Shown here: positions 36,556 through 64,000 of the stretch, piece by piece
How positions within the stretch are numbered: position 1 is the first letter of the stretch
Layout: every line of letters starts with the position of its first letter
IMG/VR virus record: IMGVR_UViG_3300047994_000374
Span: 310,001-374,000 of that record
Reading direction: 5' to 3' (one strand)
DNA length: 64,000 nucleotides
Translations under genes and position numbers: made by a program
The notes under the pieces: generated by a model
The model's database searches: none
Seen by the model: only the letters and a program-made list of their open reading frames with translations
What the model was told of the DNA's origin: nothing

Positions 36556-36864
36556 TCATAAAAAATTTTGAATCTTCATTAAGCTTAAAATAATTTTATC
36601 TGCTTTATTTAAATTTTCTTTTGTAATATATTCTTGATCTAATTTAAAATTTAATCCAGTTTTATTTGTTAATTTAATTATATTCATTGACTTAATAAAT
36701 GTATAATTTGTTTCTGATTCAACCTTGTCACGAATATAAATTGAAAGTCGAACGATTTCTCCATCTACATCAAAATCAATAAAAGTGCAGAAATTAGAAC
36801 AATAATTAAATCTATTGTAATTTTCGCTTATTTTATTTCCACAATAACAATATAAATCAATCAT
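36556..36864 (-). CDS. small Cys-ribbon protein, C-terminal tag family
   Basis: CYCG...CSNFC; ends LMKIQNFL. Confidence 0.6.
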   Translation of the reverse strand: MIDLYCYCGNKISENYNRFNYCSNFCTFIDFDVDGEIVRLSIYIRDKVESETNYTFIKSMNIIKLTNKTGLNFKLDQEYITKENLNKADKIILSLMKIQNFL

Positions 36865-37340
36865 TAGATAAATGACATTAGTTTTTTAAGTCTCGGATCT
36901 AAATGTTTATCATCAATTGCAAACCCAGGATTATTTGCAATGAATTTCATAATCTCTGTTTGACAAGCCGCAAGCATTTCTTCTTTGAATTGATTATGTT
37001 TTAAATTGAATGCAAGTCTTGAGAAAACCATCATCCTTTGTCCTGCCGCATTCTTTTTCCATGTATTACGAACTAATTTATTTCTTTTAGGTGCAGAAAA
37101 GACTTTCGTGGTTTCTGTCACACCATTAAAAATAAAAGACACGTCGCAGTAAGGAAATACATAGAGCCCCCAAGTATCTGCTTGAAATTCTAAACCAGTG
37201 TATTTAAGATTAACGGTCTTACAGTTTATTTGTCCATAAGAGTTTATTTTCGCATCAGGAAATTCTTTTTGAACAGCTTTTAATTTTGCTACTTTGAATT
37301 CTAAATCATTGATAACAGATAACAATTGGGTAGTGGTCAT
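36864..37340 (-). CDS. hypothetical protein with tag-like C-terminus
   Basis: ends RLKKLMSFI. Confidence 0.65.
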   Translation of the reverse strand: MTTTQLLSVINDLEFKVAKLKAVQKEFPDAKINSYGQINCKTVNLKYTGLEFQADTWGLYVFPYCDVSFIFNGVTETTKVFSAPKRNKLVRNTWKKNAAGQRMMVFSRLAFNLKHNQFKEEMLAACQTEIMKFIANNPGFAIDDKHLDPRLKKLMSFI

Positions 37341-37391
37341 ATACTTTCCGTTGGCGTTTAATATTGCCTAATTATTATATATCAAGTGTTT

Positions 37392-37607
37392 TTATTCTTC
37401 ATCAAAAATTATTTTAGTTCTATTTTGGTGGCCGTGTATAAATAGCGCATCGTCCAAACTATGATATATGTTAATACTTGAGTGAGATCCAATCCAACGA
37501 ATAATGATTTCGCCTGTATCACAAATTAGACATCCCTCCGCTACAACCCCACATCCACTAACCCCCGAGACGTCTTCGTGACGATACATCTTAAACGTTT
37601 TTAACAT
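37392..37607 (-). CDS. small phage-type hypothetical protein
   Basis: RHEDVSGVSGCGVVAEG...IHGH. Confidence 0.65.
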   Translation of the reverse strand: MLKTFKMYRHEDVSGVSGCGVVAEGCLICDTGEIIIRWIGSHSSINIYHSLDDALFIHGHQNRTKIIFDEE

Positions 37608-37675
37608 GATAAGCCTTTATTTAGCGACTTGACTTGCTAATAAAATACGAAACCTTGCACCCGTCATATATCAAA

Positions 37676-38257
37676 TCAAATGTGTTCTGGATCACAATCA
37701 TACAATTTACAGAATTGTTTTAAGTCAGTTGGCGTGATATTGTCTGATCCAGCCTCAATTGAAGGATACATCAAAGTTCCAATTCCATCGATTCCTGTTG
37801 CGTGCGATAGGCCTAAATAATGTCCCAATTCATGCTCCACAACTGATTTATAATAATCCTCTGTCATTCGATCCGTTACTAAATAGATATAAGGCATAAA
37901 TGAAGAATTGTCATATAAACCCAAAGTGCTATGCTCATTTTGAGCATCTACCATCATAATTTTAGGATAATCTTCGGAAACCTTTAGAATTATTAAAGAA
38001 TTTTTGGTATCCAAATGATCTGTTGGAAGCTTTTCGATAGTAAATTGAACCTTATGATTTGTAGCCCATTCCCACTCTTCTGCTGCTTCTTGAATAGTAT
38101 CTACTTCCCATGGCGTCATACTTTGGTCCAAATAAATAGATGTCTTTACGGGCAGTTTATGAACAACAGGATGGTAGAGTATCGGGACTGATACTTGGAA
38201 TAGAACGAGCATTACGATTAAACTGCCAACCATTGACCAAAATAATATTCTCATCAC
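37676..38257 (-). CDS. matrixin-like zinc metalloprotease with N-terminal membrane/signal anchor
   Basis: HELGHYLGLSH, LMYP Met-turn, hydrophobic N-terminus. Confidence 0.88.
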   Translation of the reverse strand: MMRILFWSMVGSLIVMLVLFQVSVPILYHPVVHKLPVKTSIYLDQSMTPWEVDTIQEAAEEWEWATNHKVQFTIEKLPTDHLDTKNSLIILKVSEDYPKIMMVDAQNEHSTLGLYDNSSFMPYIYLVTDRMTEDYYKSVVEHELGHYLGLSHATGIDGIGTLMYPSIEAGSDNITPTDLKQFCKLYDCDPEHI

Positions 38258-62086: not shown

Positions 62087-62839
62087 TTAGATTAGCCTCA
62101 TGATGTAATTAGGGTCTTTTGAGAAGATGGGAATTTCATTATCCACTTTCCATTTACCTCTTTCAACAGAAAATGGCTCATTCGTTTTTACATTGATGCC
62201 GGAGATAGTTGTTTTTTCTTTAATGATACACCTACCGCGCTTTTGAGAAGTTGGCAAGTCGTTCCAATTAAATCCTTTTTGATAGCACATTTCTTGAAGC
62301 TGTGAAGTATTTTTAAGATTGCATTGATTGTGAGAATAAAGGCTTCTTGTAAGCATTTGAATACTGTTTCTGGTTGCATCTTGTTGGCGATGGAGAAAAG
62401 CGTTATTCACCTCTTCTTTAGGAACCACAAATGCTCGGCAATCAAAATGAGCGACCTTTAACTTTCCAAAAATTCGATCAGAAATAGAAGTGAAATAAGC
62501 GGAAGCCATGGAAGCAGCAACAGAACTCATCTTTTGAATGTTGTTTCCATGCCAACTTTCAGTGTTCAGTTGTTTATAATTGTTAATCAGAATGCTAATT
62601 TCATCAGACTGAATATATGCTGCAACTACATTTTGAATATTGTTGCAAAGATAAAGTGCAGTATCATTCATACAAGAAACAAGATTTTCGTCAAATGGTC
62701 TTTCGCACCCCTTCGTATAGCTATGAAAAGAAACTCCATCCAACCGAAGAATAACTGGAAGGCGCTCTGGAAGTTTAATTCTCCAAGAGTTTTCATATTT
62801 CTTTATACGATCGCCTAATTGATCTTTACCTGGTTTCAT
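62087..62839 (-). CDS. Thg1-like tRNA-His guanylyltransferase / 3'-5' polymerase
   Basis: RLDGVSFH, YIQSDEIS, FDCRAF, RQQDATRNS. Confidence 0.92.
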   Translation of the reverse strand: MKPGKDQLGDRIKKYENSWRIKLPERLPVILRLDGVSFHSYTKGCERPFDENLVSCMNDTALYLCNNIQNVVAAYIQSDEISILINNYKQLNTESWHGNNIQKMSSVAASMASAYFTSISDRIFGKLKVAHFDCRAFVVPKEEVNNAFLHRQQDATRNSIQMLTRSLYSHNQCNLKNTSQLQEMCYQKGFNWNDLPTSQKRGRCIIKEKTTISGINVKTNEPFSVERGKWKVDNEIPIFSKDPNYIMRLI

Positions 62840-63207
62840 AGGAATGCCTTCATTTTCATTAATTTTGTTGCGTATTTTTCTTTGTCTTTGTAAGGAATAT
62901 TCATTTTAGCTTGAAGTAATATTTTTGGCTTCCCATATTTATCAAACCCTTTTATTTCTAGACCTTTTGGTGAGGCATAAAATAAAACGATTTTCCCATT
63001 TATTTCAATCGGAATTTCCCAATGAGTAATCGTTTTGGCCCGCGCATCGTAGGTAATATAAAAATTCCAACTCTCACATCGATCACAGTGAAACTCAACT
63101 TCATTCGTGTAATTATCGACTTGAAATACCACACCTGCGTTGCAACAATAAGAATGAATGGGAATTGTGGATCCGTCAGCCGTTGTAATCTCTTTTCGTA
63201 AAATCAT
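62836..63207 (-). CDS. small Cys-ribbon protein, C-terminal tag family
   Basis: ends KLMKMKAFL. Confidence 0.65.
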   Translation of the reverse strand: MILRKEITTADGSTIPIHSYCCNAGVVFQVDNYTNEVEFHCDRCESWNFYITYDARAKTITHWEIPIEINGKIVLFYASPKGLEIKGFDKYGKPKILLQAKMNIPYKDKEKYATKLMKMKAFL

Positions 63208-63542
63208 AAAAAAGCTTCCAATTTTATAATTCTTTTTACAGTTTCAATATGATTTTGAATTGGCGTAAATTTATTCATTTTAAATAACATTCGTTGTGTT
63301 ATAGTATCATAGACGATGGTATAAGGCTTAACAATTGAGTCGGGCGTTAAATTTCCACTTGATAAGCTATATCTTGAGTTAGCTTGAAATATTATAATTT
63401 CATAACTCGAAAGCTTATCCTTATCATTCATCTCTGTCCAACATCTAAAATAACCACAGATACATCTTATTAAATTTACATCTCTTGGTTCTAAAGTTTG
63501 TTTGCAAAAATCATGAGGACAATGAGTAGGAACTAAATTCAT
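63204..63542 (-). CDS. small Cys-ribbon protein, C-terminal tag family
   Basis: ends RIIKLEAFL. Confidence 0.65.
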   Translation of the reverse strand: MNLVPTHCPHDFCKQTLEPRDVNLIRCICGYFRCWTEMNDKDKLSSYEIIIFQANSRYSLSSGNLTPDSIVKPYTIVYDTITQRMLFKMNKFTPIQNHIETVKRIIKLEAFL

Positions 63543-63895
63543 AGAAAAGCTTTCATTTTGATCATTCGTTCAATGAAACTTATTCTATCTTCATATGCCA
63601 CCCAAATAAGTCCTCTATAAAAATTTTGATATAGTGAGCTGCCCAATCTGACCGCCGAAACCCTATCAATCATTATGTAGTTTTTGCTTCTATTAGATGA
63701 AATAATCTTATAAGTCTGGTTATCTATAGTTTCAAATAATCGATAATACGTTATTTTTTCTGTTTCAGGTTGAATTGCAATTTCGGTACCAAAACAATCA
63801 CGTTGTTCACATTTCCAAGTAAATTCATGTGGTAAAGGGGAAATTTCACGCGTTTCTAATTTTAGACCACAGCTCGAACAAATAAATTCTTTCAT
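63539..63895 (-). CDS. small Cys-ribbon protein, C-terminal tag family
   Basis: CSSC; ends RMIKMKAFL. Confidence 0.65.
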   Translation of the reverse strand: MKEFICSSCGLKLETREISPLPHEFTWKCEQRDCFGTEIAIQPETEKITYYRLFETIDNQTYKIISSNRSKNYIMIDRVSAVRLGSSLYQNFYRGLIWVAYEDRISFIERMIKMKAFL

Positions 63896-64000
63896 AAAAA
63901 TACCTGCATTCTAACTATTTTCTTTAAAAATTTTATTCGTGATTTGAAAGGGACATATTGATCACTTTCAAAAACCAGGCCAGTATTTTTTAATATATTA
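63892..64000 (-). CDS. partial gene, C-terminal tag family (5' end outside window)
   Basis: hand translation ends RIKFLKKIVRMQVFL*. Confidence 0.55.
   Translation of the reverse strand, partial: NILKNTGLVFESDQYVPFKSRIKFLKKIVRMQVFL

What the first reader, a model, noticed from the sequence alone, without database searches (positions are those of the whole stretch)
36556..64000. About a dozen divergent small proteins share a C-terminal 'K/R-hydrophobic-x-A-F-L' tag
Seen C-termini: LMKIQNFL (36556), LKKLMSFI (36864), LLRILNFS (42740), LLKLKAFA (45837), LLSLQAFI (46163), LAKVKAFL (54223), VKLLRVWG (54935), VLKLSAFM (55501), LMKMKAFL (62836), IIKLEAFL (63204), MIKMKAFL (63539) and IVRMQVFL (63892). 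The protein bodies are barely alignable, though many have N-terminal CxxC ribbons. An aromatic residue is fixed at the penultimate position, after an amphipathic basic helix. Inference: a terminal docking or sorting signal (binding a common phage hub, packaging/injection signal, or degron for the phage Clp/HslV/AAA machinery) on a diversified effector or adaptor family.
Basis: partly seen in the sequence, partly recalled or inferred. Interest (0 to 1): 0.68.

Follow-up and report, generated by a model that had tools for sequence, protein, structure and literature searches.

The report
Shared C-terminal helix on expanded phage family
An uncultured 394-kb jumbo phage gives about one gene in nine the same 12-residue C-terminal helix ending in ...K-L-x-A-F-L; most carriers belong to one hugely expanded, undescribed family of ~100-residue zinc-ribbon proteins, and what the helix binds is still unknown.

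Summary
42740 and 54935 are not. 54223 is a truncated pseudogene.

Genome-wide, 56 of 605 ORF termini match a tail matrix trained only on foreign homologues. Only 10 of 116,268 internal positions match, and 0.025 termini per shuffled proteome. About 66-75 genes carry the tail.

Forty-one loci form one family: an N-terminal CPxC...C...H zinc ribbon, a beta-meander and a C-terminal helix. They lie in head-to-tail arrays with ATGA stop/start overlaps. Pfam and PHROGs hold no matching family. There are more than 100 metagenomic homologue clusters with the same ending.

The same tail also sits on bodies with no detectable similarity to that family: a MORN-like ~75-aa class, a Trp-rich class, and a conserved 158-aa family at window 36864.

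Selection acts on the protein. Synonymous sites vary, and dN/dS is 0.13 in the tail against 0.28 in the body.

AlphaFold2 places the tail as a helix beside the sheet, so it is not a floppy tag. However, the same five positions (R-9, K-6, L-5, A-3, F-2) are fixed across unrelated bodies. I infer a two-faced helix that is both fold keystone and shared docking surface. No partner was identified.

The parts
63892..64000 (-). 3' part of a core family member. The full gene is genome 373892-374245 (117 aa) and runs off the window end. Tail ...FLKKIVRMQVFL.
   Evidence: (12.6 bits)
63539..63895 (-). Core family member, 118 aa. CxxC zinc ribbon, beta-meander, C-terminal helix ...FIERMIKMKAFL. ATGA overlap with the genes on both sides.
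   Evidence: AF2 pLDDT 75, helix 101-117; 29.9 bits
63204..63542 (-). Core family member, 112 aa, tail ...TVKRIIKLEAFL.
   Evidence: (26.0 bits)
62836..63207 (-). Core family member, 123 aa, tail ...YATKLMKMKAFL.
   Evidence: (24.9 bits)
55501..55947 (-). Family member with an N-terminal extension, 148 aa, tail ...NVEKVLKLSAFM. Its orthologue in the relative is only 52% identical.
   Evidence: (13.7 bits)
54935..55285 (-). Distant zinc-ribbon relative, 116 aa. The body matches the family profile (hhalign 91-93%), but the tail ...VKLLRVWG does not score.
   Evidence: (-10.7 bits)
54226..54450 (-). 5'-truncated pseudogene copy. It keeps the beta region and the tail ...LVEKLAKVKAFL but has lost the zinc ribbon and the start codon.
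46163..46489 (-). Family member, tail ...LIDRLLSLQAFI. The open gene is 46163-46453 (96 aa). The profile match continues upstream through an in-frame TAA, so the first zinc knuckle, present in the relative's 108-aa orthologue, is cut off.
   Evidence: (25.9 bits)
45837..46166 (-). Core family member, 109 aa, MNCPAC... start, tail ...IIEKLLKLKAFA.
   Evidence: (23.0 bits)
36864..37340 (-). 158-aa protein of a different conserved family with no zinc ribbon. It carries the second tail flavour, ...PRLKKLMSFI. The tail is invariant (PRLKKL..F.) in five ~50%-identical metagenomic homologues.
   Evidence: (9.7 bits)
36556..36864 (-). 102-aa Cys-rich protein. The tail ...IILSLMKIQNFL is significant, but the body is not alignable to the family.
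   Evidence: (10.8 bits)
42740..43249 (-). It is not a carrier: neither tail nor body relates to the family.
   Evidence: (-8.9 bits)

Best explanation
Shown. The 'tag' is the C-terminal helix [LF]-[LI]-x-[RK]-h-h-K-[LIM]-x-A-F-h-COOH (h = hydrophobic). A second flavour reads [RK]-L-x-K-L-h-h-F-[ST]-COOH. About 66-75 of roughly 605 genes of this jumbo phage carry it. Most carriers are one lineage-specifically expanded, undescribed family of ~100-aa proteins with a CPxC...C...H zinc ribbon, a 5-stranded beta-meander and this helix. They were multiplied in tandem arrays in which the last Leu codon (YTA) plus TGA forms the next gene's ATG. The genes are real and under purifying selection, weaker on the body than on the tail.

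Inferred. The helix has two faces. Positions -12, -11, -8, -7 and -1 (about 0-140 degrees on a helical wheel) are conserved only in hydrophobic character. They pack on each protein's own variable sheet and hold the small domain together. Positions -9 (R/K), -6 (K/N), -5 (L/I/M), -3 (A) and -2 (F), which lie on the adjoining arc from 180 to 340 degrees, are fixed together with the chain end one residue after Phe. They stay the same on unrelated bodies. I read them as a shared docking epitope that ties all carriers to one common partner. That partner could be a phage or host hub protein, or the tails of other family members. The fast-evolving sheet surfaces would then bind different targets. On this reading the family is a set of early or accessory host-takeover or anti-defence adaptors built on one constant connector.
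For: - Terminal anchoring: 56/605 termini against 10/116,268 internal positions and 0.025 in shuffles.
- Family size and arrays: jackhmmer 39-51 members; independent six-frame profile search, 41 loci; 31 runs, the largest with 12 consecutive genes; 36 of 60 with ATGA overlaps against 67 of 417 for other genes.
- Zinc ribbon in 123 of 146 members.
- AlphaFold2: strands followed by helix 101-117, pLDDT about 80 in the helix. Residues 50-118 superpose on sheet-plus-helix domains at 2.7-3.2 A, so the helix lies on the sheet in the model.
- Protein-level selection: synonymous codons vary at every tail position. dN/dS is 0.13 in the tail, 0.28 in the body and 0.10 in neighbouring genes, with equal dS.
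- Foreign homologues: 112 cluster representatives. Among the 109 shorter than 200 aa, F at -2 in 105, A at -3 in 93, R/K at -9 in 104, and the chain ends one residue after F in 105.
- Same tail on unrelated bodies: hhalign matches classes B and C1, g149653 and window 36556/36864 to the core only over the last 13-28 columns, while body-only comparisons give P 0.2-0.7. The 158-aa family keeps PRLKKL..F. unchanged at ~50% overall identity.
- The same five positions carry the highest information in zinc-ribbon and non-zinc-ribbon carriers alike.
- Arrays with both tail flavours also occur in more distant phage contigs.
Against: - No partner has been found.
- The homodimer prediction gave no verdict.
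- I could not read model coordinates, so whether R-9/K-6/L-5/A-3/F-2 are exposed is inferred from helical periodicity, not measured.
- In the zinc-ribbon family the conserved face could simply pack on the conserved ribbon.
- The 'unrelated' bodies may be homologues diverged beyond recognition, all being beta-rich with a terminal helix. The class B model also shows strands then a helix, but at pLDDT 54.
- The foreign homologues were collected with a profile that includes the tail, which inflates their tail conservation.
Confidence: 0.45

Rival explanations
1. Purely structural helix. The tail is only the hydrophobic core helix of one ancient small alpha/beta fold. All carriers, including the 'unalignable' ones, are diverged paralogues, and the conserved residues serve folding only. 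There is no shared partner and no signal.
For: - AF2 models a compact domain with the helix as its only helix.
- Hydrophobic residues occupy 8-9 of 14 positions, with only a moderate hydrophobic moment of 0.37 and high mean hydrophobicity of 0.59. That is typical of a buried helix.
- Most carriers are demonstrable paralogues.
- The class B model again shows strands followed by a terminal helix.
Against: - A helix packing on sheets that differ beyond recognition should co-vary with them. Instead R/K-9, K-6, A-3 and F-2 and the exact chain end are fixed across classes, while the clearly sheet-facing positions are free to vary among hydrophobics.
- Two conserved basic residues are unlikely to be core residues.
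Confidence: 0.3
2. Membrane-targeting amphipathic helix of the MinD/FtsA kind. The cationic, hydrophobic C-terminal helix brings a varied set of small cytoplasmic proteins to the inner face of the membrane.
For: The tail has net charge about +2.5 on otherwise acidic bodies (-2), lies at the extreme C-terminus, and has Leu/Phe flanked by Lys/Arg. The resemblance to the MinD tail is from my own knowledge, not tested here.
Against: - The hydrophobic moment (0.37) is below the proteome's 95th percentile (0.49).
- The hydrophobic arc is too wide for a surface-lying helix.
- To my knowledge, membrane-targeting helices are conserved in character rather than residue by residue, unlike A-3/F-2 here.
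- AF2 docks the helix on the sheet.
Confidence: 0.08
3. Degron or adaptor tag for a protease. The tail delivers the carriers, or targets bound by them, to the phage's own ClpP1/ClpP2 with its AAA ATPase, or to a host AAA+ protease.
For: - The phage encodes two ClpP (window 17779-18399 and 18362-18946) and a PAN/FtsH-like AAA ATPase (window 11999-13315).
- A penultimate aromatic residue with a free carboxylate recalls the HbYX and HslU C-terminal docking tails (my own knowledge).
Against: - No HslV or 20S homologue is present.
- The tail is predicted to be structured and largely hydrophobic, not an exposed peptide.
- It does not resemble LAA-type degrons.
- Neither co-localisation nor co-variation with the Clp genes was shown.
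Confidence: 0.08
4. Sliding-clamp-binding motif. [LIM]-x-x-F-[L]-COOH acts like a C-terminal PIP-box or beta-clamp motif and tethers zinc-ribbon DNA-binding proteins to a clamp.
For: The spacing h-x-x-aromatic-hydrophobic at the extreme C-terminus, with basic flanks, matches the hydrophobic trident of PIP-type motifs. The comparison itself is from my own knowledge.
Against: - The position equivalent to the PIP Gln is hydrophobic.
- The motif is embedded in a 14-17-residue helix.
- No gp45-type or DnaN-type clamp was detected in the phage.
- Sixty-plus clamp clients seems excessive.
Confidence: 0.04
5. Nucleotide-level artefact. The conserved 3' ends reflect gene conversion between array members, or a translational-coupling or ribosome-binding signal for the next gene, rather than selection on the protein.
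For: The last codon is constrained by the ATGA overlap: Leu is always TTA or CTA, and 32 of 39 stops are TGA. The tail/MNCPxC junction recurs about every 310 bp.
Against: - Synonymous positions vary freely at all other tail codons.
- Tail dS equals body dS between orthologues (0.48 against 0.52) while tail dN is lower.
- The tail is kept in singletons, in genes without a downstream overlap, and in distant phages.
Confidence: 0.02

Closest known systems
[quoted passage not shown] 2021, PMC7824862)
   Same: A jumbo phage that multiplies a small zinc-ribbon protein into dozens of paralogues. The authors suggest that the phage G proteins act as specific transcription factors or as structural DNA-binding proteins.
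   Different: There is no detectable sequence relationship: tblastn of two members against 50,697 phage records, phage G included as far as the collection goes, found nothing. The passages I read mention no shared C-terminal helix and no occurrence of one on other bodies.
Viral adaptor families with a constant C-terminal hub-docking module (poxvirus ankyrin/PRANC proteins, F-box proteins). Comparison from my own knowledge.
   Same: Many paralogues in one viral genome, each with a variable target-binding body and a short conserved module at the extreme C-terminus.
   Different: No hub is known here. The module is a single 12-16-residue helix that seems to be part of the fold, not an independent ~40-residue domain. 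Bacteria have no SCF system.
C-terminal docking tails with a penultimate aromatic residue (HbYX motif of proteasomal activators; the HslU C-terminal tail that activates HslV). From my own knowledge.
   Same: The position relative to the free carboxylate is fixed, the penultimate residue is aromatic, and a hydrophobic or small residue precedes it.
   Different: Those tails sit on AAA+ ATPases or activators and are flexible. Here the carriers are ~100-aa zinc-ribbon proteins, the residue is Phe rather than Tyr, the tail is helical, and the phage has no HslV or 20S homologue.
Small sheet-plus-helix phage proteins that bind host machines (AcrIF24 N-terminal domain, phiKZ Dip)
   Same: Model residues 50-118 superpose on these at Z about 5 and 2.7-2.9 A over 55-59 residues. 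All are small phage proteins with a beta-sheet and one helix.
   Different: Z of 4.5-5.2 is within the range of common arrangements according to the tool's own calibration. Sequence identity is 5-6%. There is no evidence of shared function.

Membership tests
Curated zinc-ribbon families (Pfam Zn_Ribbon_TF PF08271, Lar_restr_allev PF14354, Ogr_Delta PF04606 and others) | Score at or above the family's gathering threshold | tested here: not met
   Best hits are 20.5 bits against a cut-off of 29 (PF08271) and 16.8 against 28.6 (PF14354). No family is shared by more than 2 of 33 members.
PHROGs phage protein families | Significant match to an existing phage orthologous group | tested here: not met
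   Best E-values are 0.0026-0.1, spread over different groups of unknown function.
Jumbo-phage lineage-specific zinc-ribbon expansions (phage G type) | N-terminal CxxC...C...[H/C] zinc ribbon in a ~100-aa protein | tested here: met
   123 of 146 own and foreign members have the pattern; the fourth ligand is His in 95 and Cys in 28.
Jumbo-phage lineage-specific zinc-ribbon expansions (phage G type) | Dozens of paralogues in one genome, largely in tandem | tested here: met
   41 profile matches in six frames; runs of up to 12 consecutive genes.
Jumbo-phage lineage-specific zinc-ribbon expansions (phage G type) | Sequence homology to the phage G zinc-ribbon family | tested here: not met
   tblastn of two members against the phage collection found no match at E <= 0.01. 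This is an analogue, not a member.
HbYX / HslU-type C-terminal activation tails | Penultimate aromatic residue at a fixed distance from the free C-terminus | tested here: met
   F at -2 in 105 of 109 foreign and 35 of 38 own members. The residue is Phe, not Tyr.
HbYX / HslU-type C-terminal activation tails | Tail borne by an AAA+ ATPase or proteasome activator, with a cognate HslV/20S peptidase present | tested here: not met
   The carriers are small zinc-ribbon proteins, and the genome has no PF00227 match.
C-terminal degrons of ClpXP/ClpAP/FtsH | Exposed, unstructured C-terminal peptide | tested here: inconclusive
   AF2 predicts a helix at pLDDT about 80 packed beside the sheet. A model cannot exclude fraying. 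ClpP genes are present.
Membrane-targeting amphipathic helices (MinD/FtsA type) | Cationic C-terminal helix with a high hydrophobic moment | tested here: inconclusive
   Net charge is +2.4 to +2.7, but the moment is 0.37, below the proteome's 95th percentile of 0.49, and the hydrophobic arc is wide.
PIP-box / bacterial clamp-binding motifs | Q-x-x-h-x-x-a-a or Q-L-x-L-F consensus, and a clamp to bind | tested here: not met
   h-x-x-F-h is present, but the Gln position is hydrophobic. No gp45-type or DnaN-type clamp was found in the phage. The host clamp could not be tested.

The most novel reading that the evidence does not exclude
The tail is a portable connector. A single helix face (R-9, K-6, L-5, A-3, F-2, free carboxylate) plugs some 70 different small binding domains, of at least three unrelated body types, into one hub. 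That hub could be the phage's own ClpP1/ClpP2-AAA protease or a central host machine. The phage would then own a bacterial-virus counterpart of the F-box/PRANC adaptor families, able to retarget one machine to many host or defence proteins.
Probability: 0.13. Interest if true: 0.85.

Novelty: new variant of a known kind. Interest (0 to 1): 0.55.

Why it matters
Jumbo phages carry hundreds of small genes of unknown function. Here about 11% of the genes, roughly 6% of the coding capacity, share one short and very strictly conserved C-terminal element.

If that element is a common connector, one pull-down with a tail peptide could name the partner of about 70 proteins at once. It could also expose a new way for phages to organise host takeover or counter-defence.

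Even on the ordinary reading, this defines a large, undescribed phage protein family. The family has more than 100 metagenomic clusters, no Pfam or PHROG entry and no solved relative. It has a clear signature, MNCPxC...[RK]hhK[LIM]xAF[L]-COOH, that annotation pipelines could use.

It also gives a clean example of birth-and-death evolution in tandem arrays held together by ATGA stop/start overlaps.

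Tried and rejected
- Megablast of window 54000-64000 against GenBank phages, and tblastn of three carriers against the same collection: no match.
- Word-based homologue search with a core member and with a class B member: only self hits.
- The search for related loci: the alignment was too variable, and a single protein found no relative.
- Foldseek against the PDB: nothing with E <= 0.001.
- VIA-align against 48,161 chains: best Z 5.6, within the 'common arrangement' range.
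- ESM Atlas by features and by shape: only generic beta-meander matches.
- BFVD: only uncharacterised proteins of uncultured Caudovirales, TM 0.5-0.65.
- AlphaFold2 of class B from 7 sequences: pLDDT 54. Usable only for secondary-structure order, and not searched further.
- Complex prediction, homodimer of window 63539-63895: no verdict (score 0.00, controls not run). This is neither for nor against binding.
- Sigma-70 promoter and terminator scan of the 14-kb main array: 71 sites against 63.9 +/- 8.4 in shuffles, not informative.
- The genome search on the record behind L011: not held.
- Topoisomerase-type zinc ribbon. Three topoisomerases and P0081 matched the ribbon part of the profile at E of about 5e-5 to 8e-4, but no member hit the Pfam topoisomerase finger. 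I treat this as generic ribbon similarity.
- Matrixin-like peptidases as the hub. There are seven paralogues, six of them within 3 kb of a tail-bearing gene (P about 0.02-0.04), but all carry lipoprotein signal peptides. They are therefore exported and unlikely partners of cytoplasmic zinc-ribbon proteins.
- Amber recoding. A CUA-anticodon tRNA is present, but TAG ends 25 ORFs normally. No other genetic code was used.

Full report
**Setting.** The window is bases 310,001-374,000 of a single 394,192-bp virus record. The record has 36% G+C, and CheckV estimates it as 92% complete. A simple longest-ORF call gives 605 ORFs, 526 of them on the minus strand, covering 94% of the sequence. Marker genes place it among T4-like or XacN1-like jumbo myoviruses known only from metagenomes. 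These include rIIA, NAD-dependent DNA ligase, RNA ligase, polynucleotide kinase-phosphatase (PNKP), a Thg1-like enzyme and adenylosuccinate synthetase. No GenBank phage matches at the nucleotide level.

**Check of the observation.**
- All twelve quoted C-termini are present.
- To avoid circularity I trained a 12-residue matrix only on homologues from other samples and scored this genome.
- 56 of 605 termini reach 8 bits, against 10 of 116,268 internal positions and 0.025 termini per shuffled proteome.
- Of the ten internal hits, two lie two residues from a C-terminus and one lies at the joint of a tandemly duplicated unit.
- In the window, 45837, 46163, 55501, 62836, 63204, 63539 and 63892 score 12.6-29.9 bits.
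- 36556 and 36864 score 10.8 and 9.7 bits.
- 42740 and 54935 score below zero and are not significant.
- '54223' is window 54226-54450, a copy that has lost its zinc ribbon and start codon. Its intact 109-aa orthologue, P0123, lies in a phage 91% identical in DNA.

**What the carriers are.**
- In-genome jackhmmer collects 39-51 paralogues of 80-150 aa. An independent six-frame profile search finds 41 loci, three of them damaged.
- The consensus is M-N-C-P-x-C, then 5-23 residues, C, 1-8 residues, H or C. A beta-rich and very variable middle follows, then P-x-x-[DE] and the tail.
- Mean column identity across 33 members is 17%. Only the three Cys and the Phe are nearly invariant.
- AlphaFold2 on this alignment gives a ribbon, five longer strands and one helix at residues 101-117, which is the tail. 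Mean pLDDT is 75, and about 80 in the helix.
- No solved structure resembles it beyond common sheet-plus-helix arrangements. Pfam, PHROGs and NCBIfam-style names are absent.
- BFVD returns only uncharacterised proteins of uncultured Caudovirales.
- A profile search of 1.84 billion cluster representatives finds 129 proteins: 17 from this genome and 112 foreign. Nearly all are 86-128 aa, start with the ribbon and end in the tail. Among the 109 shorter than 200 aa, F is at -2 in 105, A at -3 in 93, R/K at -9 in 104, and L/I/M at -5 in 105. The chain ends one residue after Phe in 105.
- The foreign copies also stand in arrays of ~100-aa genes with 4-bp overlaps.

**Genome organisation.**
- 66 ORFs carry the tail by the iterated matrix, and 71 with a looser pattern. 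On top of these come two uncalled array copies, two near-terminal variants and the 54226-54450 pseudogene remnant.
- They lie in 31 runs, the largest with 12 consecutive genes.
- Nearly all sit in the two genome arms at 0-110 kb and 340-394 kb.
- 36 of 60 overlap the next gene by ATGA, against 67 of 417 for other genes.

**The constraint acts on the protein, not the DNA.**
- Every tail codon except the last varies at synonymous sites (Arg CGA/AGA/CGT/AGG, Ala GCT/GCG/GCA/GCC, Phe TTC/TTT). Only the last Leu is restricted, to TTA or CTA, because its A starts the next gene's ATG.
- I compared the window with the 91%-identical relative (L008, L010) by Nei-Gojobori dN/dS. Pooled family bodies give 0.28, family tails 0.13 and neighbouring genes 0.10, with similar dS of 0.46-0.52.
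- So these are functional genes with fast-evolving bodies and a strongly protected tail. Gene conversion or a ribosome-binding signal cannot explain the motif.

**The tail on other bodies.**
- When the last 20 residues are removed, jackhmmer still recovers the main 92-100 kb cluster but not the window's 62836-63895 genes.
- I ran hhalign against a profile of 145 core sequences, with and without the last 16 residues.
  - Related through the ribbon: a 'D' class, genome 379535 and window 54935.
  - Matching the family only over their last 13-28 columns, with body-only P of 0.2-0.7: class B, class C1, genome 149653, and window 36556 and 36864.
  - Class B is about 75 aa with MORN-like 'HREdGPA' hairpins and the tail ...EEFxRxxKLKAF[WFLI] (A2). 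Class C1 is genome 161772/162068/162407/380228, which is Trp-rich and lacks Cys.
- The 158-aa protein at 36864 has five metagenomic homologues of about 50% identity. One, by its accession prefix (AACY), appears to come from a marine survey, and one lies on a 164.8-kb contig. All end in an unchanged PRLKKL..F..
- A 163-kb contig of a more distant phage holds a 10-kb block of about 20 ribbon genes showing both tail flavours...KLKAFL and ...NK[IL]N..h.FS.

**Anatomy of the helix.**
- In both the zinc-ribbon family and the 18 non-zinc-ribbon tails, the same positions carry the most information. In bits (zinc-ribbon, then non-zinc-ribbon): F-2 (4.1, 4.1), R/K-9 (3.3, 3.1), A-3 (2.8, 1.9), L/I/M-5 (2.5, 2.5) and K-6 (2.1, 2.9).
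- On a 100-degree helical wheel these fall on one arc from 180 to 340 degrees.
- Positions -12, -11, -8, -7 and -1 lie on the other arc (0-140 degrees). Of these, -12, -11, -8 and -7 are conserved only as 'hydrophobic' (0.9-1.6 bits in the zinc-ribbon family).
- The tail is basic (+2.4 to +2.7) on acidic bodies (-1.7 to -2.6). It has high mean hydrophobicity (0.59) but only a moderate hydrophobic moment (0.37; proteome 95th percentile 0.49).
- I infer a two-faced helix. One face is fitted to each protein's own sheet. The other is kept constant for something outside the monomer. I could not check exposure on coordinates.

**Candidate partners.**
- The phage has two ClpP genes, a PAN/FtsH-like AAA ATPase and a TopA next to them. 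It has no HslV and no recognisable sliding clamp.
- Seven matrixin-like peptidase paralogues lie in the same genome arms, six within 3 kb of a carrier (P about 0.02-0.04). All have lipoprotein signal peptides, so they are probably exported.
- The single complex prediction, a homodimer, gave no verdict.
- The partner therefore remains unknown. Self- or cross-association of tails is as likely as a separate hub.

**Comparison with what is known.**
- The nearest described case is the ~35-copy zinc-ribbon expansion in Bacillus phage G. Iyer et al. suggested that these proteins are specific transcription factors or structural DNA-binding proteins (PMC7824862). Our family shows no sequence link to any GenBank phage.
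- Resemblances to HbYX/HslU tails, to MinD-type membrane helices, to PIP or clamp motifs and to F-box/PRANC adaptors are leads from my own knowledge. The membership table records which defining features were met.

**Verdict.**
- The 'docking tag' reading is partly supported: there is an extrinsic constraint, and the tail appears on unrelated bodies.
- It is also weakened: the tail is an integral helix, most carriers are plain paralogues, and no hub was found.
- This is an undescribed, strongly expanded phage family with an unusually strict C-terminal signature. I rate it a new variant of the known 'jumbo-phage zinc-ribbon expansion' theme and moderately interesting. One cheap experiment, a tail-peptide pull-down, could decide it.

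Noticed in passing
window 23703-23777 (-): A tRNA gene with a CUA anticodon, an amber suppressor that ARAGORN labels tRNA-Pyl. TAG ends only 25 of 605 ORFs, and no long in-frame extensions follow these TAGs, so there is no clear sign of recoding.
   Followed up: partly
window 11999-18946 (-): A cluster encoding a PAN/FtsH-like AAA ATPase (438 aa, 11999-13315), a type IA topoisomerase I that matches only the core model with no C-terminal zinc-ribbon array (626 aa, 13340-15220), and two adjacent ClpP paralogues (17779-18399 and 18362-18946). This may be a phage-owned protease.
   Followed up: partly
window 37676-38257 (-); genome 11132, 53193, 65679, 89056, 101004, 101689: Seven paralogous matrixin-like zinc metallopeptidases (HExxGHxxGxxH). 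Most have an N-terminal lipoprotein-type signal with a Cys lipobox, which suggests exported enzymes and a diderm host. Six of the seven lie within 3 kb of a tail-bearing gene (permutation P about 0.02-0.04), and similar peptidases flank arrays in foreign contigs.
   Followed up: partly
window 39639-45507 and 56820-62839 (-): An RNA/DNA repair set: T4 Rnl1-like RNA ligase (39639-40862), PNKP kinase-phosphatase (41791-42732), nucleotidyltransferase (44407-45507), NAD-dependent DNA ligase (56820-58691) and a Thg1-like tRNA-His guanylyltransferase (62087-62839).
   Followed up: no
window 51164-54077 (-), and 43268-44371 (-): A VWA-like DUF2201 protein (576 aa) lies next to an AAA-type ATPase (383 aa). 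The segment is richer in G+C (39-42%) than the rest of the window (about 33%). A second paralogous ATPase lies at 43268-44371.
   Followed up: no
window 54455-54684, compared with L010:1-332: The relative's contig and this genome lose similarity exactly inside the family gene at 54226-54450. A replacement or indel removed the gene's 5' half here, and an opposite-strand ORF (54625-54933, +) follows. This is an example of gene turnover in the arrays.
   Followed up: partly
genome 40431-40919 (L002:4431-4919, -): A 162-aa protein made of two class B units in tandem, each ending in ...EEFE+hhKLKAF[FW]. The first tail is therefore internal. It looks like a read-through fusion of two array genes.
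   Followed up: no
window 59283-60080 (-): An N6/N4 DNA methyltransferase. The corresponding stretch of the 91%-identical relative (L008) does not align to it; around that position the relative carries a small HNH gene instead.
   Followed up: no
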